The position numbers were made by a program, and so were the translations under genes. This document shows, in pieces, positions 1-26,655 of a DNA stretch of 64,000 nucleotides. Under the pieces are notes generated by a model, which did not search any database, was not told the origin of the DNA, and saw only the letters and a program-made list of their open reading frames with translations. The first letter of the stretch is position 1. Each line of letters opens with the position of its first letter. The stretch lies in sequence record MT811961.1; one strand, written 5' to 3'.

Positions 1-2
1 AC

Positions 3-446
3 TACGGCTTCCGTACGTACTCACATGACTTTGGCATGGATCTTGAAGGTCGTCAATACGGTCTTGTTAAGAAAGGCAAAGTTAAAGTCAAGAACAACGA
101 AGTTAATATGGTTGCCGAATATGACAACCTACCTGAATTCATGAAACGCTGTCTAGCGCCTAAAGAGTTCCAGGTGATGAAAGAAATCAATGAGCAATCA
201 CGTGATGGTTTCCGTGGCGCAGTTATCTCAGCTGGTCCATTCTCTATTCGTGAAAGTATTGCTTATGTTCCGCCAGCAGCTATTCCATCTGTAAATTCAG
301 GTCAAAGCCAAGCTCCAGCGCAACAGTCACAGCAGCAAACTGATGAGTTCAACACTGCACCACAACAGCAGCAACAACCTCAACAACAAGCGCCGCAGCA
401 ATCACCAATGCAAGACGACATTAACTTCGATGAAATCGAGTTCTAA
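3..446 (+). CDS. 5'-truncated CDS with Q/P-rich linker and acidic-aromatic C-terminal tip (SSB-tail-like)
   Basis: Frame is open from position 3 (YGFRTYSHDFGMDLEG...) and ends ...QQAPQQSPMQDDINFDEIEF, followed by a terminator. Confidence 0.6.
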   Translation, partial: YGFRTYSHDFGMDLEGRQYGLVKKGKVKVKNNEVNMVAEYDNLPEFMKRCLAPKEFQVMKEINEQSRDGFRGAVISAGPFSIRESIAYVPPAAIPSVNSGQSQAPAQQSQQQTDEFNTAPQQQQQPQQQAPQQSPMQDDINFDEIEF

Positions 447-453
447 TAAAAGC

Positions 454-501
454 CCTACTCCCTCCGGGGAGTAGGCTTGTCCTTTTATTCTTTTTTTTTT
501 G
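454..501 (+). terminator. Intrinsic terminator
   Basis: Hairpin cctactccc-tcc-ggggagtagg (454-475) followed by a long T tract. Confidence 0.8.
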
Positions 502-507
502 TTAAGC

Positions 508-540
508 GAAAAAAAAATACCCACCCCGAAGGGCGGGAAG
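508..540 (-). terminator. Intrinsic terminator of the Ro60-like gene
   Basis: Hairpin at 520-537 preceded on + by an A run (U tract on -). Confidence 0.6.
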
Positions 541-624
541 AAATAGTATCTTAACCAATTAGAAGAACCAGTAAGCCCTCACTTACTCTGTCCCGAAGCT
601 TTTTAAAAAGCCATACTATTTGGT

Positions 625-2175
625 TTATTTTGCGAGGAAGATATCTACAAGCTTGGTTTGCAGAGTACCGATTCCTTTTACTGTTAACAGTCCAGCATGA
701 CGAGGTTCATCCAGAATCACTGTAGCGTCTTCTACGGCGACATGATGAACTATCTTAGTCAATGGGTTACGTCCAGTCAAATACGTATCCAGGGCGTCTA
801 GGAAGCCTTTACGGAAGTGTTCTGACTTAACCACTGGTCGATGTTCATAGATAACCACATTGTCATATGCTACCGGCTGTGTCATCAGAATCTGAATAAA
901 CGACATCGAAGGCATAACAACTCGATCTTTAGGAACTACACGCAGATGATCATAAAGGGCATCGACAGTAACGTTCTTAGGATCTAATACAAATGTACCT
1001 TCTCCAACAATAACAAGATTGCAATGAAGTGACTTGGCACGATCAAGTGCACCGGCAACAACTTCTTTAGAAATCTCATCCCAGTTAAGGAAAAGGAATA
1101 CTGCATTGTTTTCAATACCACGTTCAGGATATTCAACTTCTTCATAGCGACGAAGTAGCAAACGTCTTGTTTCAGGGAAACGTTCTGCATCCAAGGCCTC
1201 ACGATAAATCAATAGATCCACTGGTGTGATGCGCTGGTCTCTTAGCCAACCAGAAACAATACACATAAAGCGATCTGCTAGTTTGTCATCCAAGAATTCA
1301 AACGAAGGATCTATTTTTGCGATTTGCAGGAAGTTTTCCGGAGCTACATGTTTGCCATAGAATAATGCGCTCAGTATCTCAGCATAGTACAAGAACTTCT
1401 TCGGATAGACAGTGTGGTCGAAAGGTAAACCTTCTATCATCTTCGCAGCGGTCTCTACAGAGCCTTTAGCGCACAAGTTAAGGCCTAACACCTCTGAATA
1501 CGTTAAGAAGCGCTGAGGGACTTCTGAGGCGTCTCCACGATATCCTTTGATAATTCGCAGACATGCATCCTGTAGGTCATCACTGCCACGCAGAAACAAA
1601 CGACGTACAAGACTACGGTGGCTAAATGATATCGGTTTTTCATCGAACTGTACCGTTACCTTTTTATGGGCCAATACCTCACCGAGTAGATCACGAGGGT
1701 CTCGTTCAAGATACCAGCGACTAAGTACTTTCTTAACCATGCGGCCAAAGCCACGATAGTAAGAGATGAAACACGCAAAGCGAAGAATGTCTTCTGCATC
1801 CATACACAGATCTACTGCTGTATTTAGAGCATAGCTACTTGCTTCGAAGTCATCCGTATTGCCGGCTACCTTAGCCAGGATGAATAACCGATTTGCTTTT
1901 GTTTCTTTTGTAAATGAATACGATTGGGATACAACAAAACTAGTGATCCCTCTACCGCGTTGCTTGATCTGTTCCTCATAGCCATTGAAAGCCAAGTCGG
2001 AGTAAACTTGATCAGCACAGTCGATAGATGCCACATGACCATTCGAGCCCGTCAATAGAATGCGCTTCAGTGTAGTCTCTAAACTAATCACATTACGTTC
2101 TTTAAGGGAATCCAGCAAAGTACTTAATTCTACTTCGCCTTCGAATAATGTCTGGGTGATTTTATTTTTGTTCAT
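625..2175 (-). CDS. rsr: Ro60/Rsr-like TROVE-vWA RNA-binding protein with degenerate MIDAS motif
   Basis: 516 aa with ordered Ro60-like blocks: LKRILLTGSNG, GFGRMVKKVLSRWYLERD, SFSHRSLVRRL, and C-terminal ALDTYLTGRNPLTKIV...ILDEPRHAGLLTVKGIGTLQTKLVDIF. SD tgagga precedes the ATG. Confidence 0.8.
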   Translation of the reverse strand: MNKNKITQTLFEGEVELSTLLDSLKERNVISLETTLKRILLTGSNGHVASIDCADQVYSDLAFNGYEEQIKQRGRGITSFVVSQSYSFTKETKANRLFILAKVAGNTDDFEASSYALNTAVDLCMDAEDILRFACFISYYRGFGRMVKKVLSRWYLERDPRDLLGEVLAHKKVTVQFDEKPISFSHRSLVRRLFLRGSDDLQDACLRIIKGYRGDASEVPQRFLTYSEVLGLNLCAKGSVETAAKMIEGLPFDHTVYPKKFLYYAEILSALFYGKHVAPENFLQIAKIDPSFEFLDDKLADRFMCIVSGWLRDQRITPVDLLIYREALDAERFPETRRLLLRRYEEVEYPERGIENNAVFLFLNWDEISKEVVAGALDRAKSLHCNLVIVGEGTFVLDPKNVTVDALYDHLRVVPKDRVVMPSMSFIQILMTQPVAYDNVVIYEHRPVVKSEHFRKGFLDALDTYLTGRNPLTKIVHHVAVEDATVILDEPRHAGLLTVKGIGTLQTKLVDIFLAK

Positions 2176-2189
2176 AACAAATCCTCAAT

Positions 2190-2237
2190 AAATAAAAGAG
2201 GTATAGAGTACGGACGACCCACAAGGGCCGTCCGTAC
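2190..2237 (-). terminator. Terminator/attenuator between the candidate Y RNA and the Ro60-like gene
   Basis: Minus-strand hairpin gtacggacggccc-ttgt-gggtcgtccgtac followed by ctcttttattt. Confidence 0.65.
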
Positions 2238-2258
2238 CTACCTGTCCTCTCGGACAAT

Positions 2259-2345
2259 TCAACGAGCGAGGTCTAAACCTACACAGGGCGACTCACTGGG
2301 GTAAAGACCCAGGGTCGACCTGATTCGATCAAGCAGCTCGGCATG
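2259..2345 (-). ncRNA. Candidate YrlA-like Y RNA (circularly permuted tRNA-like module)
   Basis: On - strand: closing stem cgagc/gctcg, T-arm-like gcttg-ATCGAAT-caggt, closed acceptor-like hairpin, GG-containing D-like loop. It lies directly upstream of the Ro60-like gene. Confidence 0.45.
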
Positions 2346-2439
2346 CATGGTCCTACAATGTAGCTCCATGACTCACATTCAAATGCACAGTTTCATTTGG
2401 AGTTCCGACATGATACGCAAGCGTTCATACAGAGTTGTG

Positions 2440-2456
2440 CATACTATTAGGTATAG
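2440..2456 (-). promoter_or_regulatory. Class II (TATG-type) phage promoter driving the Y-like RNA / Ro unit
   Basis: Minus strand ctatacctaatagtatg, near-identical to copies at 6077 and 16220. Confidence 0.6.
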
Positions 2457-2463
2457 ATGTTTT

Positions 2464-2493
2464 TTTTTCATTGGTTCATGAGTTCTATATTAC
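2464..2493 (+). promoter_or_regulatory. Class I (early, TATATTAC-type) promoter
   Basis: tctatattac at 2484-2493 with upstream TTTCA. Matches the phiKZ early consensus TATATTAC. Confidence 0.65.
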
Positions 2494-2534
2494 CAGGGTA
2501 GATAGATACATTAAAAACTAAAAGGAATAAACCA

Positions 2535-3161
2535 ATGGAAGATATTAAATTCAATACCGTGCCAGCTGGCCTACACTTCAACGACAAACTTGAAGCAACA
2601 TTCTACCACGAGGAAGAAGCAGTCTCGTTTCTACTTCAATTACTTACACAACGCAAATCAGATACTCCGCTGTATCTTGTGGCGTTTCGCAATGGACCAC
2701 TACTGAAGTATCTTGTTACTGGCCGTCCAGAAAACGAAGAGGAAGATTTCCTGCGTTGGACAGGCTACCGATACTATAGTGCCAAACTAGTTAAAACGAG
2801 TCATCCTTCGATGCGCCGTCTGTGGTTAAACCAAGAAGGCGTATTTGATATGATGGATGCAGCCGGCGTTCCATTAATCCAGTGTCGCTACTTTGCTGTG
2901 GTTGACAAAGAGATCACCGAAAAGATGGAATATCATGGAGAGGATCTAAATCACGATACTGTTTCTAGTCTTCTTCATCGCTACACAAAGACCATTGCCG
3001 GCGAGGGTGATGGCAATCCAACTAACCGTTATTCGGCATCCTGTCCGGTAGAGGAGAATCTCATCGTAGTTTCTATTCCTCTATCTGACGATGCCTTTCC
3101 ACTAAAATACCATTGGGAGAAACACCATGTCTATAGCACATCTGATGCAAGCGGCCTATAA
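2535..3161 (+). CDS. Hypothetical early protein, 208 aa
   Basis: SD aaagga plus ATG, downstream of the early promoter. No recognised motif. Confidence 0.75.
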   Translation: MEDIKFNTVPAGLHFNDKLEATFYHEEEAVSFLLQLLTQRKSDTPLYLVAFRNGPLLKYLVTGRPENEEEDFLRWTGYRYYSAKLVKTSHPSMRRLWLNQEGVFDMMDAAGVPLIQCRYFAVVDKEITEKMEYHGEDLNHDTVSSLLHRYTKTIAGEGDGNPTNRYSASCPVEENLIVVSIPLSDDAFPLKYHWEKHHVYSTSDASGL

Positions 3162-3305
3162 TCTAATCAAGAAGGGCAAGTGTCCTAACTGCAAAACCGA
3201 ACTCAATGACTCGATGGAGGCAGGAGACAAGGAAATTTATACATGTGGTTCTTGTGCCTCTAACTGGGTTGTTGACCATAACGCCAAGACTGTGGAGAAG
3301 CACTA

Positions 3306-3611
3306 ATGGAAGTTATCATCGGTACTATCCTCCTGGGCGTTCTCATCGTCCTGGCAGTTTGGAGCGGGATCAAGATCTGGCCACAGACACTTTCTGATTC
3401 ATGCAATGGCGAGAGTGTCTATATGATCCAGAGATTGAATCAGGCCTATCGAGAAGCCGCCATAAAGACCGATGACCCGGTAAAAGCAATGGAGGCCGCA
3501 CGGGCCGTCCATTTTTCCTTTCGCAATCAATATCCCAACAATCCGTTTGTAACCAGATTTGACTTTGGTAAGTTTGTTGACAAACGCCATGAACATTACT
3601 TTGGGGTTTAA
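3306..3611 (+). CDS. Small membrane-anchored protein
   Basis: N-terminal hydrophobic helix. HFSFRNQYPNN resembles a motif in the next gene. Confidence 0.7.
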   Translation: MEVIIGTILLGVLIVLAVWSGIKIWPQTLSDSCNGESVYMIQRLNQAYREAAIKTDDPVKAMEAARAVHFSFRNQYPNNPFVTRFDFGKFVDKRHEHYFGV

Positions 3612-3612
3612 C

Positions 3613-3951
3613 ATGTTCGATATCGCAATTTTAGTTCTAATGCTGGTTGGTCTTTTCGGAGATCTTTTCTATATTCGTCTAATTGGCGTTCGTCAGCGTC
3701 GTTTGATTCTTCGTTGGAATCATGAGTTTGTTGATCTTATTCGTGAACTAGCCAGCGCGAGTTATCAGAACGATGACTATACATATGGACGAGAAGCCTC
3801 TGTAAAGCTCCATGGTCAGTTTTTAGACCAATACCCTAGCAACCTTATTCCTCAAGAGATGAAATCCCCTCAGATAGCTGTACGGATCTTCTCGCGGGAA
3901 TTTAACAAACTAACCAACGTACCAGGAGTAGACAATGGAGATGTTCTTTGA
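3613..3951 (+). CDS. Small membrane-anchored protein, paralog of the previous gene
   Basis: Likely start MFDIAILV directly after the upstream stop. N-terminal TM helix and HGQFLDQYPSN. Confidence 0.7.
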   Translation: MFDIAILVLMLVGLFGDLFYIRLIGVRQRRLILRWNHEFVDLIRELASASYQNDDYTYGREASVKLHGQFLDQYPSNLIPQEMKSPQIAVRIFSREFNKLTNVPGVDNGDVL

Positions 3952-4285
3952 TCCTTTGCATTATTTAACCATTATCGACCTTACGATACTGGGTGCACTT
4001 ATCGTCATCATCTTTGGATGGATGGCATATGACAAAGGTATCGACGTATACGATCGTAAACTACTTGATGAGTTTACTAAATTCCATCGTGAGTTAATTG
4101 ACTCAGAGATGCTGATCAACTACGTCAAGCAAGATGATCGCTCTGGTTGGAACATGTTCGTCTACACGATGGCTACCAATGCTGGACTAGATGAGAATCG
4201 ATACTTCCGTAAGTGGTATCTGAATCATGGCTTCCAGAAGCTGTTTGATGATCTACCTGAAGACTCTATACAACTGGCTTTATAA
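3935..4285 (+). CDS. Small membrane-anchored protein
   Basis: SD aggag, N-terminal TM helix, overlaps the upstream stop, followed by a terminator. Confidence 0.7.
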   Translation: MEMFFDPLHYLTIIDLTILGALIVIIFGWMAYDKGIDVYDRKLLDEFTKFHRELIDSEMLINYVKQDDRSGWNMFVYTMATNAGLDENRYFRKWYLNHGFQKLFDDLPEDSIQLAL

Positions 4286-4291
4286 CATCAT

Positions 4292-4337
4292 GGAGAGGGG
4301 TTATCCTCTCTCCTGCTCTACCTCTTTTTTCTTTTTT
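4292..4337 (+). terminator. Intrinsic terminator
   Basis: ggagagggg-ttat-cctctctcc followed by a T tract. Confidence 0.7.
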
Positions 4338-4405
4338 AAATTTAAAATAACAGACCATTCTAATCGTTTAGTTTTCCAAAAGGGGGAACCGTCTGGGAGG
4401 GGGTT

Positions 4406-4552
4406 TTAGCGTTAATCCTATTAAGACTTAATAGAGAGCTAGATACAGCTAGATAGAGATCATCTAGATCAGAGATAGATGAGAACTAGTAGCTAGCTAA
4501 GTAGATAGGATATCATCGATAGAGAGGGATAGGGACACTGGGATAACGCTAA
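4406..4552. repeat. AGAT/GATA-rich low-complexity tract flanked by a 9-bp inverted repeat
   Basis: ttagcgtta (4406-4414) and taacgctaa (4544-4552) enclose about 10 (A/G)GAT(A) units. Confidence 0.7.
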
Positions 4553-4592
4553 TACAAGCACCTAGATAAAAATTTTCGATTTTTTTTTTCAG

Positions 4593-4628
4593 CTGGCTCG
4601 AAAGAGCTAGTGTTATTATTTTTTTTTT
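4593..4628 (+). terminator. Probable intrinsic terminator
   Basis: ctggctc-gaaa-gagctag followed by a T run. Confidence 0.5.
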
Positions 4629-4704
4629 CGTATTTTGTGACCTATGTGAATTCTGTTGAAATACGTGTATGGGGATATGAGATTTCACGTAGACGGAGAA
4701 ATAC

Positions 4705-4735
4705 CCACTCCCTCCCCCGTTAAGGGGAGAGGTGG
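4705..4735. terminator. GC-rich hairpin, terminator-like
   Basis: ccactccctcccc-cgttaa-ggggagaggtgg. Confidence 0.45.
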
Positions 4736-5580
4736 ATACTTCAATGCGGATAACTCTGGATACTGGGGAATTTTCTTTAAAGTTAATTCGATAGTATTGA
4801 GTTGTGTTGGATCAGACGAGTGTATCTGATACCGATAACTTCTGTGAAAGTTATCACTTAGCTATATAAGTTCGATATCTTCCACATAACCCATGAGGAA
4901 GTATTTACTTATTAATCTGATAGATACATCAGATGAAAATGGATAATGGTCTTAGAGACACATACAGGGACTCTAAGGAGTTAACAATATCATTAACTCA
5001 CAGGGTTTCTAACTAAGTCCTTTAAGAGAAGCAAACAAAATAGAAACTTTGTTAAGATATAAAGGCTCATAGTGGAATTCAAAAGATCTTAATATATTGT
5101 GTCGTAGAATAAAAAACAACCTTATCACCTAGTGTAATAAAATTTTGATATGTTATAAATTCATGTTAGTTAAGTTAGATTATGATATTGTATCTAGTTT
5201 TACTAAGATGAAGTTACACATCATGAGATTCTACTACATAATATCCACGAGATGTAATTACCAACAAATCCATATTTTCTATCAGAGATATAAATAATCA
5301 TGATTCCTCCCTCACGGGAGAAATCTACAAAATCATCTTTATGAGAAAAATAACCACGCGCTCTCGCGCGTTATTATATTTATCTTTATCTTTAGATAAA
5401 GTAAATGGACCTCTCTTTATATTTATTTAACCTGTTATTATTTCTTTTTACTAATTATATCTAAAGATATAAGTATAAAGATATATTAAGCTCGTGTCAA
5501 ATAATTTAATCAGCTGGTTAATTTTGATGAACTGTGGACAAAGCCAGTCACCATAAGGCCTGAGAAAAGTTTTAAGAGAT

Positions 5581-5714
5581 TATACCCAATCTTGTAGACA
5601 ACCATGTTATGACGACGGCGTGGATGAGATCACTGGCGAGTAATCTCTGCATTGTCTATCTCCTCTGAATTACCATCCCTCTCCCACTAGGGAGGGGGGT
5701 AGGTATTATTCTTT
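5581..5714 (+). ncRNA. Candidate small RNA unit U1
   Basis: Promoter-like tatacccaatcttgtag, closing stem agacaa/ttgtct, inner gagat/atctc hairpin, terminator 5671-5714, no ORF. Confidence 0.45.
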
Positions 5715-5741
5715 GTCCTGATGGAAATAAAAAAAAAACAC

Positions 5742-6072
5742 ATACACCCAATAGTATGACTTCAGTGAACCATTAATTGCTCTCCTAAGTGTTGATGTAT
5801 CTCGTTTAGTCCTTTCTTACATTGTTCGGTTCCTGTAAACCGATGGTGCATGATAGTTTCTCTGATCGCCTCCCTTGTGGAAGTTATTTGAGTGAAGCCT
5901 CCAATTTAGATTGTTTTAGTTGTGATGCCTCCTGACCTCAGGTTTGGAGGCTGCCTTCTAAAGTCATCTGCATGAGATTGACCCATTGCAGTTTTACCTT
6001 ATGATCTGCAACGAAACCGTTAAGAGTGTGAAGCCTCCCTGCCTATGGCGGGGAAGCTAATTATTCTTTTAT
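5742..6072 (+). ncRNA. Candidate structured small RNA unit U2 (about 310 nt)
   Basis: Promoter-like atacacccaatagtatg, long-range helix atgactt/aagtcat, several hairpins, terminator 6032-6072. Confidence 0.5.
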
Positions 6073-6076
6073 CAGT

Positions 6077-6258
6077 TTATACCTAATAGTATAGTAAAAG
6101 TGTTGATCTCTTTCTGCTTTTTCTGCATGCCTATTTCCTTGGGCACGTCATCGTTTTGGAAACTGTTCGCTCCTCTGAGCGTGGTGGCTTTCTGATATTA
6201 GACATAATGATTCCTAGAGCTACCCTCCTGCCTTTGGTGGGAGGGTGAATTTCTTTTT
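6077..6258 (+). ncRNA. Candidate small RNA unit U3
   Basis: Promoter-like ttatacctaatagtata, hairpins such as cgctc-ctct-gagcg, terminator 6222-6258. Confidence 0.45.
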
Positions 6259-6267
6259 AACCGTCGT

Positions 6268-6571
6268 GTCTAATGATGTAGCAACGAATTACCATTTGTT
6301 GATTAAAATGCTTTTAATGAATTACCTCAATAAAGCTGAATTCATTGTCGGAGGTCAAGTCCTGTTACCGACTGACAGTGAAGTAGTGGTGGTGTTATTG
6401 CATCGTCCTCGATCTGGACTTTCCTTAGGGTCCAAATAGTAATTGTCTGAAAAGTTACTGCTTTTTTAAATTTCATAACGTTTGTATCGTTATGGGTTGA
6501 CTCAGGAAGAGTCGATCCTTAAGCATCGATGGTGGTGGGGGTGTTGTCCCTCGCCCCGCATCTTATTTTTT
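6268..6571 (+). ncRNA. Candidate small RNA unit U4 (may encode a short peptide)
   Basis: Promoter-like gtctaatgatgtag, hairpins cataacg/cgttatg and gactc/gagtc, terminator 6528-6571. A weak ORF ends at 6439. Confidence 0.35.
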
Positions 6572-6576
6572 ATGTA

Positions 6577-6708
6577 GTCACCTAATCTTATGGTTAAGTG
6601 ACGTATCCAATTCTTTGGTCGGGATTGGACACCTGGATTCTTTCAGGTTCTCTCTTGCTATTCCTCCTGCCCTTCGGGGTGGGAGGTTATAGTTTATTTT
6701 TTGTTTTC
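6577..6708 (+). ncRNA. Candidate small RNA unit U5
   Basis: Promoter-like gtcacctaatcttatg, two hairpins each near attcttt, UUCG terminator 6663-6708. Confidence 0.45.
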
Positions 6709-6795
6709 CTTATTGACAGCGAATCCTATGGGTATAATTTTAGTTAATTAAAGTTACTCCTTCAATCGTATTAGTTAATAAGAGGTAGGCGAAGT

Positions 6796-7077
6796 ATGGG
6801 TACACCGATACTATTCGCGGCTTTAATCGGCTTTAGCTGGCTCATAATTTCTATGGAAAGAAAGTCGGTTTTACGAGAGTGTGAGTCTGAGAAAACTTCG
6901 ACGTTGGGCAAACTCCATTTACTGGCTAGTCATAAATGGCAACCCGATACAGCTGAGAAGAAGATTCAACAGATCGCACAAGTAAGACGAACCAATGGGC
7001 TAGGTAATAAGTTGGTTCCAGGCATCAGCGACGATGACATCAAGCGAGTATGCCGAGACAAAGCTTGCAGTCTCTAA
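6796..7077 (+). CDS. Small membrane-anchored protein, 93 aa
   Basis: SD gaggt and an N-terminal hydrophobic helix. Confidence 0.7.
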   Translation: MGTPILFAALIGFSWLIISMERKSVLRECESEKTSTLGKLHLLASHKWQPDTAEKKIQQIAQVRRTNGLGNKLVPGISDDDIKRVCRDKACSL

Positions 7078-7125
7078 GACTAAAAACAAAAACAACAACC
7101 AATATAGATTATAACAACAAGAGGA

Positions 7126-7515
7126 ATGGCCATGACCAGTTACGGTTATATTGCTCTCGCGTTGGTGATAGGCTTAGTTGCGTTAGCGTCTTGCTGGACT
7201 GTCAGTAAGAAAAGGGATGAAGTTAACCAACAGCACATGGAAAACGTAGAAGAGATACTCGAGAAAAAGAAAGCACCTCCAGTTGAAATGGAAGAGGCCG
7301 ATCTTTATATCGCATTGTTTACTATTTATGCTCGCGACCACGTAACGTCAACTGGACGCAAGCTATCAAGTAACCGTCTAAGTAAACTAGAAGCTGCATA
7401 CCGCGAAGGCTATCAAGTCTTAATGGGTAGAGGCTTACCGGAAATGGATAAGCCATACCAGCGAATCAAAGCTGCTTTGAAGTCACATGATCTCATGGTT
7501 GAGCAAGTGGGCTAA
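7126..7515 (+). CDS. Small membrane-anchored protein, 129 aa
   Basis: SD agagga and an N-terminal TM helix. Confidence 0.7.
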   Translation: MAMTSYGYIALALVIGLVALASCWTVSKKRDEVNQQHMENVEEILEKKKAPPVEMEEADLYIALFTIYARDHVTSTGRKLSSNRLSKLEAAYREGYQVLMGRGLPEMDKPYQRIKAALKSHDLMVEQVG

Positions 7516-7528
7516 AAAAAAAGATAAT

Positions 7529-7553
7529 CCTATCCCCCGTAATGGGGGATAGG
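7529..7553. terminator. Bidirectional terminator
   Basis: cctatccccc-gtaat-gggggatagg with A and T flanks, between convergent genes. Confidence 0.8.
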
Positions 7554-7562
7554 GTTTCTTAT

Positions 7563-8327
7563 TTATCGTGTAATACCTAAACGTAAAATACGGTTATATG
7601 TTTTACGATCGTTCATGATTGCCTTGGCAGGAATCTTCTTCAGTTCTTCTTCGTAGATCTCTTTGGCACTTGCGTACTCGTCGATAATCTGACGCATATA
7701 AGAAGAAGGCGCACCACCCCAGCCATCACCGTCGCCTACCTTTCCAGCAAGCTCAATGTTGATCAGGTGCTTGGCTGCCAAAACAGCTAGCTGTGCAATT
7801 GATCTCTGGAAGCGTGGATTGATGTTTCCTAGGTTGTCATCATGGGCAAGTTGACAGCGAACAAAGGTTCTCCAGCCTAAACTCCATTCATAAACAGCAA
7901 TGGTGTTTGGTGCTACGAGTTCTGCTCGTGCTGTACCCGTGCCTCTTGGTCCCATAGAAGCTTCGCCAACAATAGCAGACAAACCACCTTGTGCCATACC
8001 GATGTCGTCATTGTCCATTTCTAAACTATGGACAGCAGTAATGCGACGGCCATGTGTTCTGCTAGTCGGGATCTTAAATACATGTGCATTGTTGATCTGC
8101 TGATAAGGAAGATCATGCACAGGAATCGTTTCGCTTTGACCGCTAACTAAGTTAAGGTCAACCATCAAGTAATCACGTACGACCTTTTGTTCAATATAGT
8201 ATTCCAGGTTATATGTATCATACGCACTCCATTGCGATTGCGGTTTAAATGCACGCGTTAGAATGTTCTTGTCGATATCTGCCATGATGCGTTGAACGCA
8301 CAAGGCTATACAGCTGTTGTATGACAT
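7563..8327 (-). CDS. Conserved virion protein, possibly T4 gp13-like neck/head-tail adaptor
   Basis: Likely start MSYNSC. C-terminal GG...RQIIDEYASAKEIYEEEL pattern recalls neck proteins. Position matches the phiKZ-like core block. Confidence 0.45.
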   Translation of the reverse strand: MSYNSCIALCVQRIMADIDKNILTRAFKPQSQWSAYDTYNLEYYIEQKVVRDYLMVDLNLVSGQSETIPVHDLPYQQINNAHVFKIPTSRTHGRRITAVHSLEMDNDDIGMAQGGLSAIVGEASMGPRGTGTARAELVAPNTIAVYEWSLGWRTFVRCQLAHDDNLGNINPRFQRSIAQLAVLAAKHLINIELAGKVGDGDGWGGAPSSYMRQIIDEYASAKEIYEEELKKIPAKAIMNDRKTYNRILRLGITR

Positions 8328-8406: not shown

Positions 8407-8436
8407 AATCCCAAGCCAATTTGTAATCTATATTAC
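8407..8436 (+). promoter_or_regulatory. Class I early promoter
   Basis: tctatattac at 8427-8436, with aatcccaag ending 11 nt upstream. Confidence 0.6.
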
Positions 8437-12766: not shown

Positions 12767-14938
12767 ATGTCCTTCCAAAACCCATTCTTTTTACCACTTG
12801 ACGCATACCAGCGTGATTTGGACTTGGTAGGTAACTACAAAAAGTCACAGGCTAAGTATCTGTCTGTGAAAAGAAAAATGCCTTTAGAGAAGGCAGAAGC
12901 AATTGTCGAGCGTATGGAACTTAAGCCAAACTCTCCGACAATGAACATGCTCCGTCGCAAAGTTATGCAGGATCGTGTTAAGTCTCGCGGTGATCTCGTG
13001 AGCTACCTTGATTGGGTAAGTACCAATTCACATATTCTGGCACCTAACCTTATTGCCTATGCAAACCCAGATGTTCATCGAGCATTCGTTGCTGACTTTA
13101 TCGACGTTAACTTGGGTTTACGTAAAAAGGTTAAAAAGGCAGGTCAGGTAGCAAAACAAAACGGTGACCAAGTTTATGCAGATTTCTGTGACCTGTTACA
13201 GGCCAACTACAAAATCCGTAACAACTCGATCTCGGGCGCTACTTCATCTCCACATAACCCATTGTACTACGCTAGTGCACACACAACACTAACGTCACTA
13301 TGTCGCACTATCACGACAACGGCTAACTCAATCAATGAGAAGATGCTTGCATCTAACCGTCATTACTTTAGTCCGATTGTTACAATGGAGAACTTGGTTT
13401 ACCTTGTTCGCAATACTGACTACGCATTAGTCAACAATGCCATCGTTAAGTACGACTTACATATCCCTACTGCTGACGAAGTCTTTGAACAGATTCTTCG
13501 TTCGACTCGTAAGTACTGGGAAGATGCAAAAGAAGAAGCATCACTGCGTGAGTTCATCGAAGGTATTGATCCAGTTGAACGTGCCATCATCGCAATGTGT
13601 GGTGATATTAAAGCACTGACAATCTACAACAACCAGTTCATGCGTCAGATGTACGAACGTCTAATGCAAGAGCCAAGTGACATCATGTCGTTCGATGATT
13701 CAGTAGAATTCATGAAGTCGGCTGATGACGATCTATTGGCACTGGCTGGTATGTTGACATCGAAAGAGATGAAAGGTAAAGAACTACGTAACGTGATGAA
13801 AGAGGAACCTGAGCTTTACTGCTTCATGGCTTCTCGTCTAAAACATGTTTACCATATCTTTACTGAATACTCTGATTTCGTTAAGGCGTTTATCACTACT
13901 CTGAACTACCCTGCTCATCTACATAGCTTCCCTAGTATGCTTCGTGATGGTGTTGTAGCATCAGATACTGACTCATCTATCTTTACTACTCAGCATCAGT
14001 GCCAATGGTTCTGCAACTCTTTGGTTAACACACCAGAGATGGTTTCTGTAGCGGCAATCACTACTTACTTTGCTTCTCAGAATATCGCACATAACCTTGG
14101 TATGCTTTGTGCACAGGTAGGTGTAGAACGCAATGCTCTATTCCGTTGTACGATGAAGAATGAATTCTACTTCCCAGTGATGGTAGTAACGACTCGTACA
14201 AAACACTACATGGCGATCATCTCAGCATGTGAAGGTCAAGTATACGGAAAGAACAAAACAGAGATCAAAGGTGTAAACCTTAAGAACTCGAAGCTCCCAC
14301 CTAAAATCCGTAAGGTACTGGAAGATTACCAGTTGAACATTATGGACCAGATAGGCAAGGGTAACAACCTGACTCCGATGAATATCGTTGCCCCTATTGC
14401 AATGGTTGAGCACAACGTACTGGAAGATATTCGTTCTGGTGGTGCCACATTCTATCGTTATGAGCAGGCTAAAACAAAAGAGACGTATGCACGTCCTGAG
14501 TCTTCTAACTATGAGAAGATTGAGTTATGGAATGCCGTGTTTGGTGACAAGTACGGATGTGCAGAACAGCTGCCAGTTCAATGTGTGAAAATCCCAGTAA
14601 CTATCGACAAGAAAGAAAAGCTACTTGAGTATGCTTCTAAACTCGACGATACGATGGGTCGCAATTTAATGCGTCATGCAGAACAATGGGGTAAAGCAGG
14701 TAAAGGTTACACTAACTTACTTGTTCCAGTTGAGCTGTTGGCCGATGGTAAGATTCCAGCCGAAATGAGAAGTATCATTGACGAACGCAAAATCCTGCGT
14801 ACGATGACAGATGCCTTTTATATCACATGTGAATGTTACGGCCTGTACTCACTTAACAAACGCAACACTCGTTTCTACTCTGACTTGTACAGCAAAGAAG
14901 AAGCAGAGAAAGCATTGTTCTTCCCTGTTGAACTATAA
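12767..14938 (+). CDS. DNA polymerase, family B polymerase-domain subunit (phiKZ gp50-like)
   Basis: Motifs KIRNNSISG, ASDTDSSIF, MKNEF, KHY, KGVNLK. 723 aa with no exonuclease domain. Confidence 0.9.
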   Translation: MSFQNPFFLPLDAYQRDLDLVGNYKKSQAKYLSVKRKMPLEKAEAIVERMELKPNSPTMNMLRRKVMQDRVKSRGDLVSYLDWVSTNSHILAPNLIAYANPDVHRAFVADFIDVNLGLRKKVKKAGQVAKQNGDQVYADFCDLLQANYKIRNNSISGATSSPHNPLYYASAHTTLTSLCRTITTTANSINEKMLASNRHYFSPIVTMENLVYLVRNTDYALVNNAIVKYDLHIPTADEVFEQILRSTRKYWEDAKEEASLREFIEGIDPVERAIIAMCGDIKALTIYNNQFMRQMYERLMQEPSDIMSFDDSVEFMKSADDDLLALAGMLTSKEMKGKELRNVMKEEPELYCFMASRLKHVYHIFTEYSDFVKAFITTLNYPAHLHSFPSMLRDGVVASDTDSSIFTTQHQCQWFCNSLVNTPEMVSVAAITTYFASQNIAHNLGMLCAQVGVERNALFRCTMKNEFYFPVMVVTTRTKHYMAIISACEGQVYGKNKTEIKGVNLKNSKLPPKIRKVLEDYQLNIMDQIGKGNNLTPMNIVAPIAMVEHNVLEDIRSGGATFYRYEQAKTKETYARPESSNYEKIELWNAVFGDKYGCAEQLPVQCVKIPVTIDKKEKLLEYASKLDDTMGRNLMRHAEQWGKAGKGYTNLLVPVELLADGKIPAEMRSIIDERKILRTMTDAFYITCECYGLYSLNKRNTRFYSDLYSKEEAEKALFFPVEL

Positions 14939-16078: not shown

Positions 16079-16108
16079 GATTTCAAGAAACACACATGTC
16101 TATATAAC
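16079..16108 (+). promoter_or_regulatory. Class I early promoter, distal, for chimallin
   Basis: GATTTCAAG-N11-TCTATATAAC. Confidence 0.6.
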
Positions 16109-16219
16109 CCAGATGTTTATGAAAGAGTATTTCAAAATTAACACTTGGTGTTTATAATATAGGAAGTGATCAGTTGATCTCTTTCGATAATGAATCTCCC
16201 AGTAAAAACTTGCTAGTGT

Positions 16220-16385: not shown

Positions 16386-18323
16386 ATGACATTCGTAGCA
16401 CCAAACGCACAACAAAACAAACCAGCTGAAACTCAAGTAGAAGTAGCTCAGCCACAAGTGCAACCACAAGCAGCAGCACAAACTGCTCAACCACAACAAC
16501 CTGCGCAACAAACTGGTGGCTTTAAGTCTATGCTTGCAGCGTTCGGTCACACTCAAGTATCTTCTCTAGGTGAAGGTACATTCGCTAAGTTCGTAGAAGC
16601 GACTGAAGAAATCCAAAAAGGCGACGGCTCTGCTGACGCAGTTAAGTTCTTCCACGCTAAGCCAGCTGATCTAGCTCTACCGATTATGGTTTACGCTAAG
16701 AAAGTTCAAGCTCGCGTTTACTTCTACGCTCTATTGCCAGAAGCACTTCTTTACGCACCAATGCGTCAACACGAAGAGCTAGTTAACAAAAACTTCGCTG
16801 GCGGCGGTAAGAAAATCACAATCGACTTCCCAGTTTCTAAATGTTGGAACGAACGCTACATCGGTAAAGTACGTGCTTTCCTAGCAGAGAAATTCCAAGT
16901 AGCTGGTGAAGCAGTTGTACCTGTACACTTCTACGCTGTAGGTAAGAACCAACCAATCCTTGAAGAAGGTAACGTTGAGCGCATCTACAACCTAGCAGCG
17001 AACGCAATCAAGTCTAAAGCAAACCCTGCGAACTTGGTTGACGTGTCTCTATTCAAGAGCCAAGAAGTTCAAGTTGACGTTGACACAGAAATCCTACCTG
17101 GTCAAAACGTTGTAATGAGCAACGGTCGTGCAACAGCATGTGACGCAGTTATCACTGTTCGCGCTTCTGAGCGTAAGAACAACAGCTTCGACCCACATGA
17201 CGACGGTATGTCTGCACTGCTATCTCGCACAGCAGTTAAGTTCGACACTATCCGTACTCCTGGTATCATGCCACAAATGCAACCAGGTATGATGCACAAC
17301 GGTGCTCGTCCAGAAAACCATGCGCTACTAGTACTAACAGGTGTTGATGCATCTGAGTCTTGTGCACGTGTAACTATCGAAAACCCACTGACTCCTGTGA
17401 TCGGTCTAATGTCTACAACTCTGTTGGCATCTGGTCGTAACTGGGAATCAATCTTCGCTAACCCTGCTAAGCGTGGTCCTATCTCTCGTGATCTAGGTGT
17501 ACTAGGTTACCAATACGAACCATACGCAGGTGCTGGTGTTCAGTTCACACCTAAGCCAAAAATGATTGAGTACACTCAAGCAGCTTCTTCTACTGACTCT
17601 GTTACATTCCGTGCATTCTGTGATGCGTACTTCGTGCACAACTCAATGACACTAGCAATGGACATCGGTATCGGTACTGCTGAATCTTGGACTCAACAGC
17701 TATTCCTAGCTGCGGCTAAACGTGTATCTGGCGCTAACGATGCGTTGATCAACCTGTTCGATGCAATGACTGGTGGTGAGTTCTCTAAACAGTGGGCTCA
17801 AGCTAAGGACAAAGAAGTTGTTCAAGCTAACACAGTTATCGTTCACGGCGGTGAGTACAACCTGCCTGATGGTTCTCCATCTGACATCCGTCACATCGAT
17901 ACGCTATTTGCAGTAGCAGCAGCTAAAGAGCAAGCAGCATCTATCGATTCTCCAGTGAATGCATTCTCTGAATCTTTCATCCCTGGTGCAACTGACGGTG
18001 CTCAAGGTCTAGAACGTCTAGACGGTCGTCGTAAAGATATCGTTGCTCTTGAGCCATCTGCTGAAGGTAACTTCGATACTCTATACATCCGTGTGTTCTT
18101 CAACCCAGAGCTTGGTCCACGCATGGCAGCAGCTATGTCTGTAGCGGGCATCAACATGAACCCACGTGGTCTAGTTGATACTCAAATCATCAGCCAGCTA
18201 GCAAGCGGCTTCGTATACGGTCAAGCAATTGACGGTAACGTAGTTAACAATGTGTTCCGTGCAAACGTTGGTGCAGCAGGTAGCCAATTCGGTAACCACA
18301 TCCCTGGTCACATCTACATCTAG
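16386..18323 (+). CDS. chmA: Chimallin, phage nuclear shell protein
   Basis: 645 aa, extreme high-expression codon bias, disordered Q/A/P N-terminus. Position directly upstream of nvRNAP beta' is the hallmark ChmA synteny. Not confirmed by alignment. Confidence 0.8.
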   Translation: MTFVAPNAQQNKPAETQVEVAQPQVQPQAAAQTAQPQQPAQQTGGFKSMLAAFGHTQVSSLGEGTFAKFVEATEEIQKGDGSADAVKFFHAKPADLALPIMVYAKKVQARVYFYALLPEALLYAPMRQHEELVNKNFAGGGKKITIDFPVSKCWNERYIGKVRAFLAEKFQVAGEAVVPVHFYAVGKNQPILEEGNVERIYNLAANAIKSKANPANLVDVSLFKSQEVQVDVDTEILPGQNVVMSNGRATACDAVITVRASERKNNSFDPHDDGMSALLSRTAVKFDTIRTPGIMPQMQPGMMHNGARPENHALLVLTGVDASESCARVTIENPLTPVIGLMSTTLLASGRNWESIFANPAKRGPISRDLGVLGYQYEPYAGAGVQFTPKPKMIEYTQAASSTDSVTFRAFCDAYFVHNSMTLAMDIGIGTAESWTQQLFLAAAKRVSGANDALINLFDAMTGGEFSKQWAQAKDKEVVQANTVIVHGGEYNLPDGSPSDIRHIDTLFAVAAAKEQAASIDSPVNAFSESFIPGATDGAQGLERLDGRRKDIVALEPSAEGNFDTLYIRVFFNPELGPRMAAAMSVAGINMNPRGLVDTQIISQLASGFVYGQAIDGNVVNNVFRANVGAAGSQFGNHIPGHIYI

Positions 18324-19750: not shown

Positions 19751-21073
19751 AAAATAAAACAATACCTCTAAGGAGGGTACATGGAAATCGTGATCAACGG
19801 CATGATTTTCAGACGCTCTGGCCAGCATCCTTCACTTGCAGTCTCTGTTTGTGGAAGGGTCTATAATCTGAATTTAAAACAAGAAGCAGAGATCAATCCA
19901 CCAAAGGAAAATTGGTAGCTGACTCTAACCTCACCGGATACGAACAAGACGATTCTCTTGCATCGTCTCGTTGCCGAATCGTGGGTTATAAATCCAGATC
20001 CGTTATTGTTCAAGGTCGTCAATCATTTAAATGGCGACAAGCACAACCCCCATGCTAGAAATTTGGAGTGGACTACCTATCGTGGTAATCTTCTACATGC
20101 CTATGCACTGGGGCTGAGGACTGAAATGAAGTCCTTGGAAGTTTTCGACAAAGTCAAGAAAATTTGGTTTAAATCGGATGGCGTCAATGCGACGTCAGAA
20201 AAGATCGGTTTGTCTTCGGCTCAGCTTTCATATCATCTGAAAGTTTCTGGTTGGTATGAGAACGATAGTCATATCGTACAACTGCCCAATCTAGAAGAGC
20301 GAGTAATTCCAGGTACGTTATCGGTAACTGATTCTGTTTATGCTAAGCATATCGAAACAGGAAAAGTTTATGTCGATGTCAATGTCGCATCACTGGCAAG
20401 ACAGATAAATGTACCAAAATCAAATATCAAGCGGGTATTAAAGAAAGGCAAGGAGTACCCAACGGGTGGTTTCTTGTTTAGTCTCGATGGTGAGTTTCCT
20501 GAAACTTTCAGGTACAATCATCGCACTGCGGTGAATTATTGCCTGGTTAATGAAACTGGCGATGAAATCACTGGAACTAGTATTCGCGATCTTATATCGA
20601 AAACAAAGATTAACGGAAAACGACTCAGTAGGATGAAGAAGGAAAATACTTCTTTCAAAGGCTGGAAGTTTAAATTGTAAGTCCGCCCCTATGGTGACAT
20701 ACGGGTGAGAGTGTGTTAATTGCTGGTAAAGTCTAAAGCCCAACACCAAAACGGAATCCGAAAGGATAGACGGCAATGGTGACGAAAGTCAGAAAAGACG
20801 TTGGGATGGCCTATGGTGAGAGCCTAAGGGTTTTGATAATGGACAATTCGAGCAGCCAAGTGCCTAAGTATATCCGTGAGGATAGATATGGTAAAGGTTC
20901 AACGACTAAGGGATTCTGCACCCTGTAGGGGCCAAGTGGCTTCCAAACGCACACGCCTCGGGTTGACTGAAGAAGTCTTATCCCCGAGGATTGATATAGT
21001 CTCGGCGTCCAGTGAAAACCTGGAGAAGTTCATAAGAGAACTGCATAGATTAACGACCTATGTGAAGACTCCG
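19751..21073 (+). mobile_element. Group I self-splicing intron with homing endonuclease
   Basis: Core elements: aattgctgg (20718), aattcgagcagcc (20845), gttcaacgacta (20897), gatatagtct (20993). P3 gtgtgtt/aacgcac, P7 gacta/tagtc, terminal G. Removal restores NADFDGD in frame. Confidence 0.92.
19781..20680 (+). pseudogene. NUMOD4-HNH homing endonuclease with in-frame TAG at 19916-19918
   Basis: SD aggagg plus ATG 19781 is in frame with LHRLVAESW..NHLNGDKHNPHARNLEW. One amber codon falls at codon 46. Confidence 0.75.
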
Positions 21074-21712: not shown

Positions 21713-21722
21713 TCTATATAAC
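21713..21722 (+). promoter_or_regulatory. Class I early promoter core
   Basis: tctatataac, without a clear upstream TTCA element. Confidence 0.45.
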
Positions 21723-21755
21723 CACATTGTATTTAAACCACAAAAGGAACATAGT

Positions 21756-26625: not shown

Positions 26626-26655
26626 GATTTCAAGTGATGTTAATATCTATATTAC
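26626..26655 (+). promoter_or_regulatory. Class I early promoter
   Basis: GATTTCAAG-N11-TCTATATTAC. Confidence 0.7.

What the first reader, a model, noticed from the sequence alone, without database searches (positions are those of the whole stretch)
625..2175. Ro60/Rsr-like RNA-binding protein in a nucleus-forming jumbo phage, with a dead MIDAS site
Seen: Ro60-like blocks in the right order across TROVE and vWA. The MIDAS DxSxS position reads LNWDEIS and the TDNE position reads YEHR. Known: Ro60 rings bind Y RNAs and damaged structured RNA. Bacterial rsr often sits with Y RNAs and rtcB, and Salmonella couples it to RNA repair. Inference: the phage runs its own Ro RNP, possibly to protect or triage tRNA or mRNA against host RNA-targeting defences, since mRNA must leave the shielded phage nucleus. 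I know of no description of this in Chimalliviridae.
Basis: partly seen in the sequence, partly recalled or inferred. Interest (0 to 1): 0.85.

Follow-up and report, generated by a model that had tools for sequence, protein, structure and literature searches.

The report
Divergent Ro60 gene in Vibrio jumbo phage
This jumbo Vibrio phage carries a real but strongly diverged copy of the RNA-binding ring protein Ro60 that has lost its metal site and its usual tRNA-like partner RNA, and a different conserved structured RNA now sits in front of the gene; the basic Ro60 call was already in GenBank and in the phage's 2020 genome paper.

Summary
The window is Vibrio phage vB_pir03 (MT811961.1, positions 62001-126000). 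ORF 625-2175 (-), 516 aa, is a true Ro60/Rsr homolog. Pfam TROVE misses it, but a profile of its clade matches bona fide TROVE+vWA_Ro60 proteins (hhalign 99.7%, E 6.5e-27, 460 columns). An AlphaFold model (pLDDT 86) hits only Ro60 structures (TM up to 0.64). The MIDAS site is gone (D-S-S-T-D reads N364, D366, gap/I368, S423, H445), while 115 of 134 full-length homologs keep it intact. dN/dS is 0.11, so the protein is functional. The phage encodes chimallin (16386-18323). The Ro60 call is not new: GenBank says 'TROVE containing domain protein', the 2020 paper says 'Ro60-related', and 354 phage records carry Ro60.

New here: BONAISHI has a canonical, MIDAS-intact Ro60 at the same syntenic slot, with two unannotated YrlA Y RNAs just upstream. 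The pir03 clade has no YrlA. In its place is a conserved structured leader (2176-2351, -): an invariant stem, variable hairpins, and a terminator-like hairpin 20-30 nt before the start codon. No rtcB, RNA ligase or tRNA gene supports the RNA-repair idea.

Verdict: new variant of a known kind, moderate interest.

The parts
625..2175 (-). Ro60-like gene, 516 aa (QNI21009.1, ORF 64 of vB_pir03)
   Evidence: dN/dS 0.107 against C-ZP2022
1126..2091 (-). TROVE / HEAT-repeat ring part (aa 29-350). It retains R38, G43, R141-G-x-G144, W154-Y155, H186, R191 and P258. It has lost the canonical Q..KY..R motif, and the H187-equivalent is F194.
628..1125 (-). vWA-fold domain without a MIDAS site (aa 351-516)
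   Evidence: dN/dS 0.163
1069..1089 (-). LNWDEIS (aa 363-369) at the position of the canonical DxSxS loop
838..849 (-). YEHR (aa 443-446) at the position of canonical xTDN (T to E444, D to H445)
2176..2351 (-). Conserved structured leader or candidate small RNA. P1 is the stem GAGC (2336-2339) paired with GCUC (2264-2267), inside the invariant blocks GAGCTG (2334-2339) and CCTCGCTC (2264-2271). P2 is a long variable hairpin. P3 is the hairpin at 2242-2257. P4 is a GC hairpin. After it, a pyrimidine tract pairs with the ribosome-binding site.
   Evidence: three ~30-aa GenBank ORFs here are not called in any relative
2208..2237 (-). P4, a 13-bp GC-rich hairpin followed by a U-rich tract (terminator-like), ending about 32 nt before the ATG
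   Evidence: 7 pairs with changes on both sides in the extended stem; equivalent hairpins in BONAISHI, L011 and L012
2485..2495 (.). Invariant GGTAATATAGA / TCTATATTACC block. It is most likely the promoter of the divergent + strand operon, because it sits a fixed 36-47 nt from that gene's ATG in 10 loci.
520..537 (-). Terminator-like hairpin plus T-run about 90 nt downstream of the Ro60-like stop codon
2535..3161 (+). Divergently transcribed 208-aa gene of unknown family, paired with the Ro60(-like) gene in all ten loci
16386..18323 (+). Chimallin (nuclear shell protein) homolog; context for 'nucleus-forming'
   Evidence: Pfam PF25677 at 31.9 bits (cut-off 27) and PHROG 4795 at E 4e-26

Best explanation
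The gene is the fast-evolving ortholog of a canonical phage Ro60 that an ancestor of this group of Vibrio chimalliviruses carried at this locus together with tRNA-like Y RNAs (YrlA). BONAISHI still has that arrangement. In the lineage leading to pir03, C-ZP2022, sm033 and at least five metagenomic relatives, the protein kept the HEAT-repeat ring closed by a vWA domain and stayed under purifying selection. It lost the MIDAS metal site, the canonical Q..KY..R motif and (in pir03) the His that canonical Ro60 needs for Y RNA binding. YrlA was replaced by a different conserved structured RNA transcribed towards the gene. Inferred mechanism: a transcript that starts in the intergenic region folds into P1-P3 and mostly ends at the P4 hairpin and U-tract, giving a small RNA of roughly 150-250 nt. 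Read-through yields the Ro60-like mRNA, whose ribosome-binding site can pair with the preceding pyrimidine tract. The protein binds this RNA as a non-canonical Y RNA and/or as an autoregulatory operator, and as an RNP acts on RNA metabolism in the infected cell. The closest tested analogy is Thermus phage phiLo Ro60, whose upstream-encoded Yrl RNAs tether host PNPase and slow RNA decay. Shown: homology, fold, MIDAS loss, selection, synteny with a canonical Ro60-YrlA module, and RNA structure conservation. Inferred: transcription of the leader, protein-RNA binding, and any effect on host RNA decay or defence.
For: Homology and fold. MIDAS loss is specific to the clade. Purifying selection on both domains: dN/dS 0.084 (TROVE) and 0.163 (vWA). 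Orthology by synteny in 10 loci (terminase ... Ro60 ... divergent ~200-aa gene ... DUF7484). BONAISHI ORF49c is Pfam TROVE 53 bits plus vWA_Ro60 89 bits with an intact DVSGS/GGPT/TDNE. It has two YrlA hits immediately upstream on the same strand (59.3 bits, E 6e-11; 35.8 bits, E 4e-4). No YrlA or Y RNA signal in pir03, sm033, L005, L011 or L012. Leader: invariant blocks across phages whose proteins are ~40% identical. The same four-element fold is obtained independently in 5 lineages. z is -2.9 to -6.6 with 0/200 shuffles reaching the observed energy in all six. RNAalifold gives P1 plus a 20-bp P4 with 7 pairs changed on both sides. pir03 and C-ZP2022 differ at 9% of leader positions against pS 0.46 in the gene, with two double-sided compensatory changes. 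A hairpin before the ATG is present in all loci, including BONAISHI. Precedents: phage Ro60 with upstream Yrl RNAs and PNPase (PMC12135203); Y RNAs upstream of rsr processed from one precursor in M. smegmatis (PMC4201824).
Against: There is no direct evidence that the leader is transcribed as a separate RNA or bound by the protein. It matches no Rfam family and has no tRNA-like T or D arms. The invariant P1 cannot show covariation. P2 and P3 conservation rests on only five independent lineages and on single-sequence MFE folds. The U-tract in pir03 starts 8 nt after the stem, so P4 is not a textbook terminator and the simple scan did not call it. The promoter for the leader is not identified, and the one invariant promoter-like block probably serves the opposite strand. 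Loss of the H187-equivalent and of the basic KY..R motif could mean that RNA binding was weakened, not retargeted. The high-confidence model used an alignment containing canonical Ro60s, which biases it towards that fold, although the clade-only model gave the same top hits.
Confidence: 0.5

Rival explanations
1. The leader is purely cis-regulatory: a transcription attenuator and/or translational operator of the Ro60-like mRNA, not a trans-acting partner RNA. The protein then either binds other cellular or phage RNAs without a dedicated Y RNA, or uses the leader only for autoregulation.
For: The layout (structured domain, then terminator-like hairpin, then a ribosome-binding site that can pair with the preceding pyrimidine tract, directly before the regulated gene) is the classic leader arrangement. 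There is no YrlA or tRNA-like module. The invariant P1 and internal-loop sequence suggests a specific ligand or protein site.
Against: In BONAISHI the same position holds bona fide YrlA genes followed by a hairpin. In M. smegmatis and phage phiLo the Ro60 partner RNAs lie just upstream of the gene. So position alone does not separate the two readings, and they are not mutually exclusive.
Confidence: 0.27
2. One reading: a Ro RNP coupled to RNA repair or triage that protects phage mRNA or host tRNA from RNA-targeting host defences, needed because mRNA must leave the phage nucleus.
For: Ro60 and Y RNA sit with rtcB/rtcA in Salmonella (PMC7790460, listed). Jumbo-phage TROVE proteins were discussed in an RNA-repair context by Iyer et al.. 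The phage encodes chimallin, so its mRNA is exposed in the cytoplasm.
Against: The genome paper reports no RtcB and no RNA ligase (0 occurrences). There are no tRNA genes. Neighbouring genes are small proteins of unknown family. The one phage Ro60 studied biochemically attenuates PNPase and is not linked to repair. Most chimalliviruses lack any Ro60: tblastn finds it in only 3-4 Vibrio phage records among 50,697. It is therefore not a general requirement of the nucleus life style.
Confidence: 0.12
3. Neofunctionalised scaffold: the TROVE-vWA ring no longer binds RNA and has been recruited for a protein-binding or structural role.
For: Clade-wide loss of MIDAS, of Q..KY..R and (in part of the clade) of the H187-equivalent. 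Loss of YrlA. Clade-specific invariant motifs (DDLQDAC, EPRH) not seen in canonical Ro60.
Against: The most conserved TROVE signature residues are retained. A conserved structured RNA persists right at the gene. The function of MIDAS in Ro60 is unknown in any case (PMC12135203).
Confidence: 0.1
4. Not a Ro60 relative at all: chance resemblance of a helical-repeat protein.
For: No Pfam or PHROG hit and no single-sequence PDB hit.
Against: hhalign E 6.5e-27 over 460 columns. Profile search E 2.9e-12 to Pfam-confirmed Ro60s in a library of 1.8 billion proteins. The eight best PDB fold matches are all Ro60, with a gap to E>=0.01 for the next hit. A canonical Ro60 occupies the syntenic slot in BONAISHI.
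Confidence: 0.01

Closest known systems
Vibrio phage BONAISHI ORF49c ('RNA binding protein', AXH70790.1) with its two upstream YrlA RNAs
   Same: Same syntenic slot in a related chimallin-encoding Vibrio jumbo phage. Same length class (539 against 516 aa). TROVE ring plus vWA. An upstream RNA gene or genes on the same strand, followed by a hairpin before the start codon.
   Different: Only ~20% identical. BONAISHI passes Pfam TROVE and vWA_Ro60, keeps the MIDAS residues and has tRNA-like YrlA RNAs. pir03 fails all three.
Thermus phage phiLo Ro60 (PDB 9KOP, 9L5Y) with Yrl1/Yrl2
   Same: Phage-encoded Ro60 ring whose partner RNAs are encoded directly upstream of the gene. Structural match TM 0.51-0.57. 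It is the best functional analogy: an RNP that recruits host PNPase and slows RNA decay.
   Different: About 14-16% identity. The phiLo RNAs were picked by a CGAA motif in a bulge, which is not conserved in the pir03-clade leaders. The host and phage type are unrelated (small thermophilic phage, no nucleus).
Bacterial Rsr (D. radiodurans 2NVO; Salmonella Rsr) with Yrn1/YrlA, the RYPER complex
   Same: Best overall fold match (TM 0.62/0.64). Same domain order. Retained RGxGR, WY and SHR signatures.
   Different: Canonical MIDAS, canonical Q..KY..R/HP motifs, Y RNAs with a tRNA-like module, and frequent linkage to rtcB/rtcA. None of these is found here.
'Ro-like RNA binding protein' of actinobacteriophages, Atu_ph07 and Phosso
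   Same: Phage-borne Ro60 genes, 354 records in the phage collection. YrlA was reported next to most phage Ro60s (PMC4201824).
   Different: Those are canonical (30-34% identical to BONAISHI, recognised by standard annotation). The pir03 clade is recognised only by profile or structure methods.

Membership tests
Ro60 / Rsr (TROVE + vWA_Ro60) | Single-sequence match to Pfam TROVE (PF05731) or vWA_Ro60 (PF25045) at the gathering score | tested here: not met
   No hit even at E<=10. The same holds for sm033, P0003, P0005, P0007 and P0008. NCBIfam Rsr scores only 12.4 bits against a cut-off of 900.
Ro60 / Rsr (TROVE + vWA_Ro60) | Full-length, co-linear homology to bona fide members by profile methods | tested here: met
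   hhalign 99.7%, E 6.5e-27, 460 columns. hmmsearch E down to 2.9e-12 against Pfam-confirmed Ro60s.
Ro60 / Rsr (TROVE + vWA_Ro60) | HEAT-repeat ring closed by a vWA domain (fold) | tested here: met
   AF2 model with pLDDT 86, pTM 0.77. The top 8 PDB matches are all Ro60, TM up to 0.64. The clade-only model gives the same top hits. This is a prediction, not a solved structure.
Ro60 / Rsr (TROVE + vWA_Ro60) | MIDAS motif DxSxS...T...D in the vWA domain | tested here: not met
   It reads N364, D366, gap/I368, S423, H445. 115 of 134 full-length homologs are perfect, and 5 more differ only by T to S.
Ro60 / Rsr (TROVE + vWA_Ro60) | His equivalent to Xenopus/mouse H187, needed for Y RNA binding (PMC11277228) | tested here: not met
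   F194 in pir03. The clade reads F/F/Y/Y/H/H/R against 89% His in canonical proteins. This depends on the alignment.
Ro60 / Rsr (TROVE + vWA_Ro60) | Adjacent Y RNA / YrlA gene | tested here: not met
   No RF02553 or RF00019 match at E<=10 in 2170-2540 or 1-8000. The BONAISHI positive control scores 59.3 bits. A different structured RNA is present.
Ro60 / Rsr (TROVE + vWA_Ro60) | Binds Y RNA or misfolded RNA | not testable with these tools
   Needs RIP/CLIP or EMSA.
Chimalliviridae (nucleus-forming jumbo phages) | Encodes chimallin (ChmA) | tested here: met
   Window 16386-18323: PF25677 at 31.9 bits (cut-off 27) and PHROG 4795 'nuclear shell protein' at E 4e-26.
Chimalliviridae (nucleus-forming jumbo phages) | Multisubunit phage RNA polymerases and phiKZ-like core genes | tested here: met
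   Record annotation and genome paper list several RNAP beta and beta' ORFs and phiKZ-like structural proteins. The divergent family B DNA polymerase PF20286 is in the window.
Chimalliviridae (nucleus-forming jumbo phages) | A phage nucleus is seen during infection | not testable with these tools
   Shown by microscopy for the related vibriophages Eric and Ariel (PMC10587174), not for pir03. No PhuZ was identified among the ORFs tested.
YrlA / Y RNA (for the upstream leader) | Match to the Rfam YrlA covariance model; tRNA-like T and D arms | tested here: not met
YrlA / Y RNA (for the upstream leader) | Encoded next to, and on the same strand as, the Ro60 gene | tested here: met
   It is directly upstream and occupies the position of YrlA in BONAISHI.
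YrlA / Y RNA (for the upstream leader) | Terminal stem with a conserved Ro60-binding helix closing a large internal loop | tested here: inconclusive
   P1 (GAGC/GCUC plus invariant flanking bases) closes a variable hairpin, but it is only 4 bp and invariant, so there is no covariation.

The most novel reading that the evidence does not exclude
A clade of chimalliviral Ro60 proteins has co-evolved away from the canonical system. It lost the MIDAS site and the canonical Y-RNA-contact residues at the same time as it exchanged its tRNA-like YrlA for an unrelated structured RNA. That would create a new class of Ro RNP, and a natural experiment on what MIDAS and the tRNA-like module do in Ro60 biology. 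Such an RNP could work in the cytoplasm of cells infected by a nucleus-forming phage, for example to shield exported phage mRNA from host exonucleases.
Probability: 0.3. Interest if true: 0.7.

Novelty: new variant of a known kind. Interest (0 to 1): 0.45.

Why it matters
Ro60 is conserved from bacteria to humans, yet the role of its MIDAS site is still called unclear (PMC12135203), and the reason bacterial Y RNAs mimic tRNA is also unclear. Here two closely syntenic phage lineages differ in exactly these features. BONAISHI has MIDAS and tRNA-like YrlA. The pir03 clade has neither, but keeps a selected protein and a new conserved RNA. That pairing gives a tractable comparative system: swap the proteins and RNAs between two Vibrio phages, or test binding in vitro. 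For nucleus-forming phages it would add a second, lineage-restricted RNA-handling factor beside ChmC (PMC11077065). For annotation, it shows that a divergent Ro60 clade escapes Pfam and PHROGs, that BONAISHI's YrlA genes are unannotated, and that the tiny ORFs called in the pir03 leader are probably spurious.

Tried and rejected
1. Direct family scans (Pfam, PHROGs, NCBIfam, single-sequence PDB) gave nothing significant. Only profiles worked.

2. I first read the invariant GGTAATATAGA block as the promoter of the leader. I rejected that because it sits a fixed 36-47 nt from the divergent gene's ATG in all 10 loci, and its other copies precede + strand genes.

3. A T-arm reading of GATCGAAUC in pir03 P2, and the 'CGAA motif' used for phiLo: not conserved in L005, L008 or L009, and broken in C-ZP2022.

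4. Y RNA / YrlA identity of the leader: no Rfam signal even when searched alone, and ARAGORN finds nothing.

5. More clade members for covariation: two IMG/VR scans and one JGI metagenome scan found none, and a second word-indexed protein search added none. Extra loci came only from exact-protein look-ups.

6. PhuZ next to the gene: the 343-aa ORF with an acidic tail and the 319-aa ORF have no tubulin or PDB match, and the latter does not match BONAISHI PhuZ.

7. The large gene-poor region 4400-6800 as a home for Y RNAs: no Rfam hit, and it is conserved only with C-ZP2022.

8. I had recalled K170/R174 as the Y RNA contacts. The review shows H187 is the Y-RNA-binding residue, so I use only H187. 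The role of K170/R174 (misfolded-RNA platform) rests on my memory and is not used as evidence.

9. The first hmmalign MIDAS table was wrong because --trim shifted the numbering. It was redone.

10. One literature query was wasted on the common word 'trove'.
Full report
**Identity of the window.** The first 6 kb match Vibrio phage vB_pir03 (MT811961.1, 286,284 bp, host Vibrio harveyi) at 100%, positions 62001-68000, and Vibrio phage C-ZP2022 at 83.4%. The ORF at 625..2175 on the minus strand is 516 aa. It corresponds to QNI21009.1, which GenBank already labels 'TROVE containing domain protein'. The genome paper (PMC7765460) lists ORF 64 as 'a structural homolog to Ro60-related proteins' and mentions Y RNAs in its discussion. 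The basic call is therefore not new.

**Is it really Ro60?** Single-sequence methods almost fail. There is no Pfam TROVE or vWA_Ro60 hit even at E<=10, no PHROG, and no PDB sequence hit. NCBIfam Rsr gives only 12.4 bits, E 0.038, though co-linear. Profiles settle the question.
- A profile of the five closest relatives hits exactly one of 177,635 PDB sequences, Xenopus Ro60, co-linearly (E 0.045).
- The same profile finds 238 proteins at E<=1e-3 among 1.84 billion representatives. Most are 510-580 aa.
- All eight tested hits beyond the immediate clade carry Pfam TROVE and vWA_Ro60.
- Profile-profile comparison with 30 of them gives probability 99.7%, E 6.5e-27, over 460 columns (query 29-512, template 34-530). 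This covers both the HEAT-repeat ring and the vWA domain.
- An AlphaFold model from the clade alone (pLDDT 65) already has Ro60 structures as its four best PDB matches.
- A model from a deep alignment (pLDDT 86.1, pTM 0.77) has Ro60 structures as its eight best matches: Xenopus 1YVP at E 1.4e-12, D. radiodurans Rsr at TM 0.62/0.64, human Ro60 at 0.60/0.62, and phage phiLo at 0.51-0.57. The next hit is at E>=0.011.

**The MIDAS site.**
- In 134 full-length homologs the six positions D-S-S / T / T-D are perfect in 115, and five more differ only by T to S. The eight clade members cannot even be aligned there by a Ro60 HMM.
- hhalign and MAFFT place LNWDEIS (aa 363-369) after the first vWA strand, where canonical proteins read DVSGSM. 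They place YEHR (aa 443-446) where canonical proteins read xTDN.
- The five ligands read N364, D366, gap/I368, S423, H445. These positions vary within the clade: N/N/G/G/K/E/E, D/D/D/E/-/P/P, and H/H/E/E/H/V/A.

The vWA domain is nevertheless under purifying selection: dN/dS against C-ZP2022 is 0.163, with 0.084 for the ring and 0.107 overall.

**What is kept and lost in the ring.** The clade retains R38, G43, R141-G-x-G144, W154-Y155, H186, R191 and P258. The canonical invariant Q..KY..R motif is replaced (E166, A169, H170, V173). The His equivalent to H187, whose H187S mutant lacks Y RNA binding according to PMC11277228, is F194 in pir03. The clade reads F/F/Y/Y/H/H/R at that position, against 89% His in canonical proteins.

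**Nucleus-forming phage?** Window 16386-18323 encodes a chimallin homolog, with Pfam PF25677 at 31.9 bits (cut-off 27) and PHROG 'nuclear shell protein' at E 4e-26. The record has multiple split RNAP subunits. The relative BONAISHI has ChmA and PhuZ, and related vibriophages were shown to form nuclei (PMC10587174). A nucleus has not been observed for pir03 itself, and I found no PhuZ among the neighbouring ORFs.

**Comparative context, the main new result.** The gene sits in the same syntenic slot (large terminase ... ~345-aa convergent ORF ... Ro60-like ... divergent ~200-aa gene ... small genes ... gene-poor gap ... DUF7484) in ten loci: pir03, C-ZP2022, sm033, BONAISHI and six metagenomic contigs.
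- In BONAISHI the occupant (ORF49c, 'RNA binding protein') is a canonical Ro60, with TROVE at 53 bits, vWA_Ro60 at 89 bits and an intact DVSGS/GGPT/TDNE.
- Directly upstream of it, on the same strand, Rfam finds two YrlA (Y RNA-like) genes with clear tRNA-like T and D arms. They are L002:6654-6765 (59.3 bits, E 6e-11) and 6452-6571 (35.8 bits, E 4e-4). Neither is annotated in the record.
- A canonical Ro60-YrlA module therefore exists in a chimallin-encoding phage. The pir03 gene is its fast-evolving ortholog.

**The pir03-clade leader.** No YrlA or Y RNA signal is found in pir03, sm033, L005, L011 or L012, even with the leader searched alone. ARAGORN finds nothing either. The 290-360-nt intergenic region of the seven closest loci instead holds invariant blocks: GAGCTG, CCTCGCTC, and GGAYGGCC..GGTCGTCC. 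Folded independently, five lineages give the same architecture.
- P1 is the invariant GAGC/GCUC stem.
- P2 is a long hairpin of unrelated sequence in each lineage.
- P3 is a small variable hairpin.
- P4 is a GC-rich hairpin with a U-rich tail ending 20-30 nt before the ATG.
- A pyrimidine tract after P4 can pair with the ribosome-binding site.

Supporting numbers:
- Folding z-scores are -2.9 to -6.6, with 0 of 200 dinucleotide shuffles reaching the observed energy in all six; the 291-nt pir03 region gives z -5.0.
- RNAalifold recovers P1 and a 20-bp P4, with 7 pairs changed on both sides.
- pir03 and C-ZP2022 differ at 16 of 176 positions (9%), against pS 0.46 in the adjacent gene, including GC to CG in P2 and UA to CG in P3.
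- Hairpins at the same place precede the gene in BONAISHI, L011 and L012.
- The three ~30-aa ORFs that GenBank calls in this stretch are called in none of the relatives and are probably spurious.
- The invariant GGTAATATAGA block is most likely the promoter of the divergent operon. The leader's own promoter is unidentified.

**Interpretation.** The best-supported reading (about 0.5) is a non-canonical Ro RNP. The ring protein is retained and selected, its canonical partner RNA has been replaced by a new structured RNA encoded at the same place, and that RNA serves as partner and/or autoregulatory operator. The nearest tested analogue is Thermus phage phiLo Ro60, which binds two upstream-encoded Yrl RNAs and, with host PNPase, slows RNA decay (PMC12135203).
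- A purely cis-regulatory leader (0.27) cannot be separated from this without transcript mapping.
The genome paper mentions no rtcB or RNA ligase, and there are no tRNAs. Ro60 is also restricted to a few Vibrio chimalliviruses and is not a family-wide feature.
- Loss of RNA binding altogether (0.1) remains possible.

**Novelty.** Phage Ro60 is common: 354 records, mostly actinobacteriophages, plus Atu_ph07 and Phosso (PMC4201824). It has a crystal structure. TROVE proteins in jumbo phages were noted for groups 2 and 3 only. No paper in the library links Ro60 or Y RNA to nucleus-forming phages. The gene call is known. The MIDAS-less clade, its orthology to a canonical Ro60-YrlA module in BONAISHI, and the replacement RNA are new observations. 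I rate it a new variant of a known kind, interest 0.45.

Noticed in passing
L002 (BONAISHI MH595538.1) 6452-6571 and 6654-6765, + strand of the locus (record about 54335-54648): Two YrlA (Y RNA-like, RF02553) genes with tRNA-like T and D arms lie directly upstream of the canonical Ro60 gene ORF49c. Nothing is annotated there in the record.
   Followed up: yes
window 20646-21025 (+): Group I intron (RF00028, 54.7 bits, E 4e-11) in the region of the split RNA polymerase beta' ORFs, next to an ORF that the genome paper lists as an HNH endonuclease. It is probably a mobile intron in an RNAP gene.
   Followed up: no
window about 4400-6800: A gene-poor, low-GC (0.36) stretch of about 2.4 kb. GenBank fills it with ~30-aa ORFs. 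Terminator-like hairpins are in excess (18 in 1-7500 against 4.7 expected). Only C-ZP2022 aligns (85.5%), yet every relative has a gene-poor gap at the same place. There is no Rfam hit.
   Followed up: partly
window 2535-3161 (+): A 208-aa protein with no Pfam or PHROG family is divergently paired with the Ro60(-like) gene in all ten loci, including BONAISHI. It is a possible functional partner.
   Followed up: partly
window 2486-2493, 8429-8436, 26648-26655 (+); one-mismatch copies at 16100-16109 and 21714-21723: A CTATATTAC(C) motif lies 33-80 nt upstream of + strand genes and is invariant at the Ro60 locus in ten phages. It is a candidate phage promoter element, but it is not significantly over-represented in the window (4 against 1.8 expected).
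   Followed up: partly
L010 1154-1651 and 1617-2651: In an sm033-like metagenomic contig the Ro60-like gene is split into two overlapping ORFs. This is a frameshift or an assembly error. Its leader is identical to that of sm033.
   Followed up: no
window 36-446 (+), C-terminal part of QNI21007.1 (343 aa): The convergent neighbour ends in a Q/P-rich low-complexity region and an acidic tail (DDINFDEIEF). It has no Pfam, PHROG or PDB match and is not demonstrably PhuZ.
   Followed up: partly
window 12767-14938 (+) and 7563-8327 (-): A divergent family B DNA polymerase (PF20286, E 2e-189) and a DUF7484 protein (E 2e-68) are both annotated only as 'hypothetical protein' in the record.
   Followed up: no
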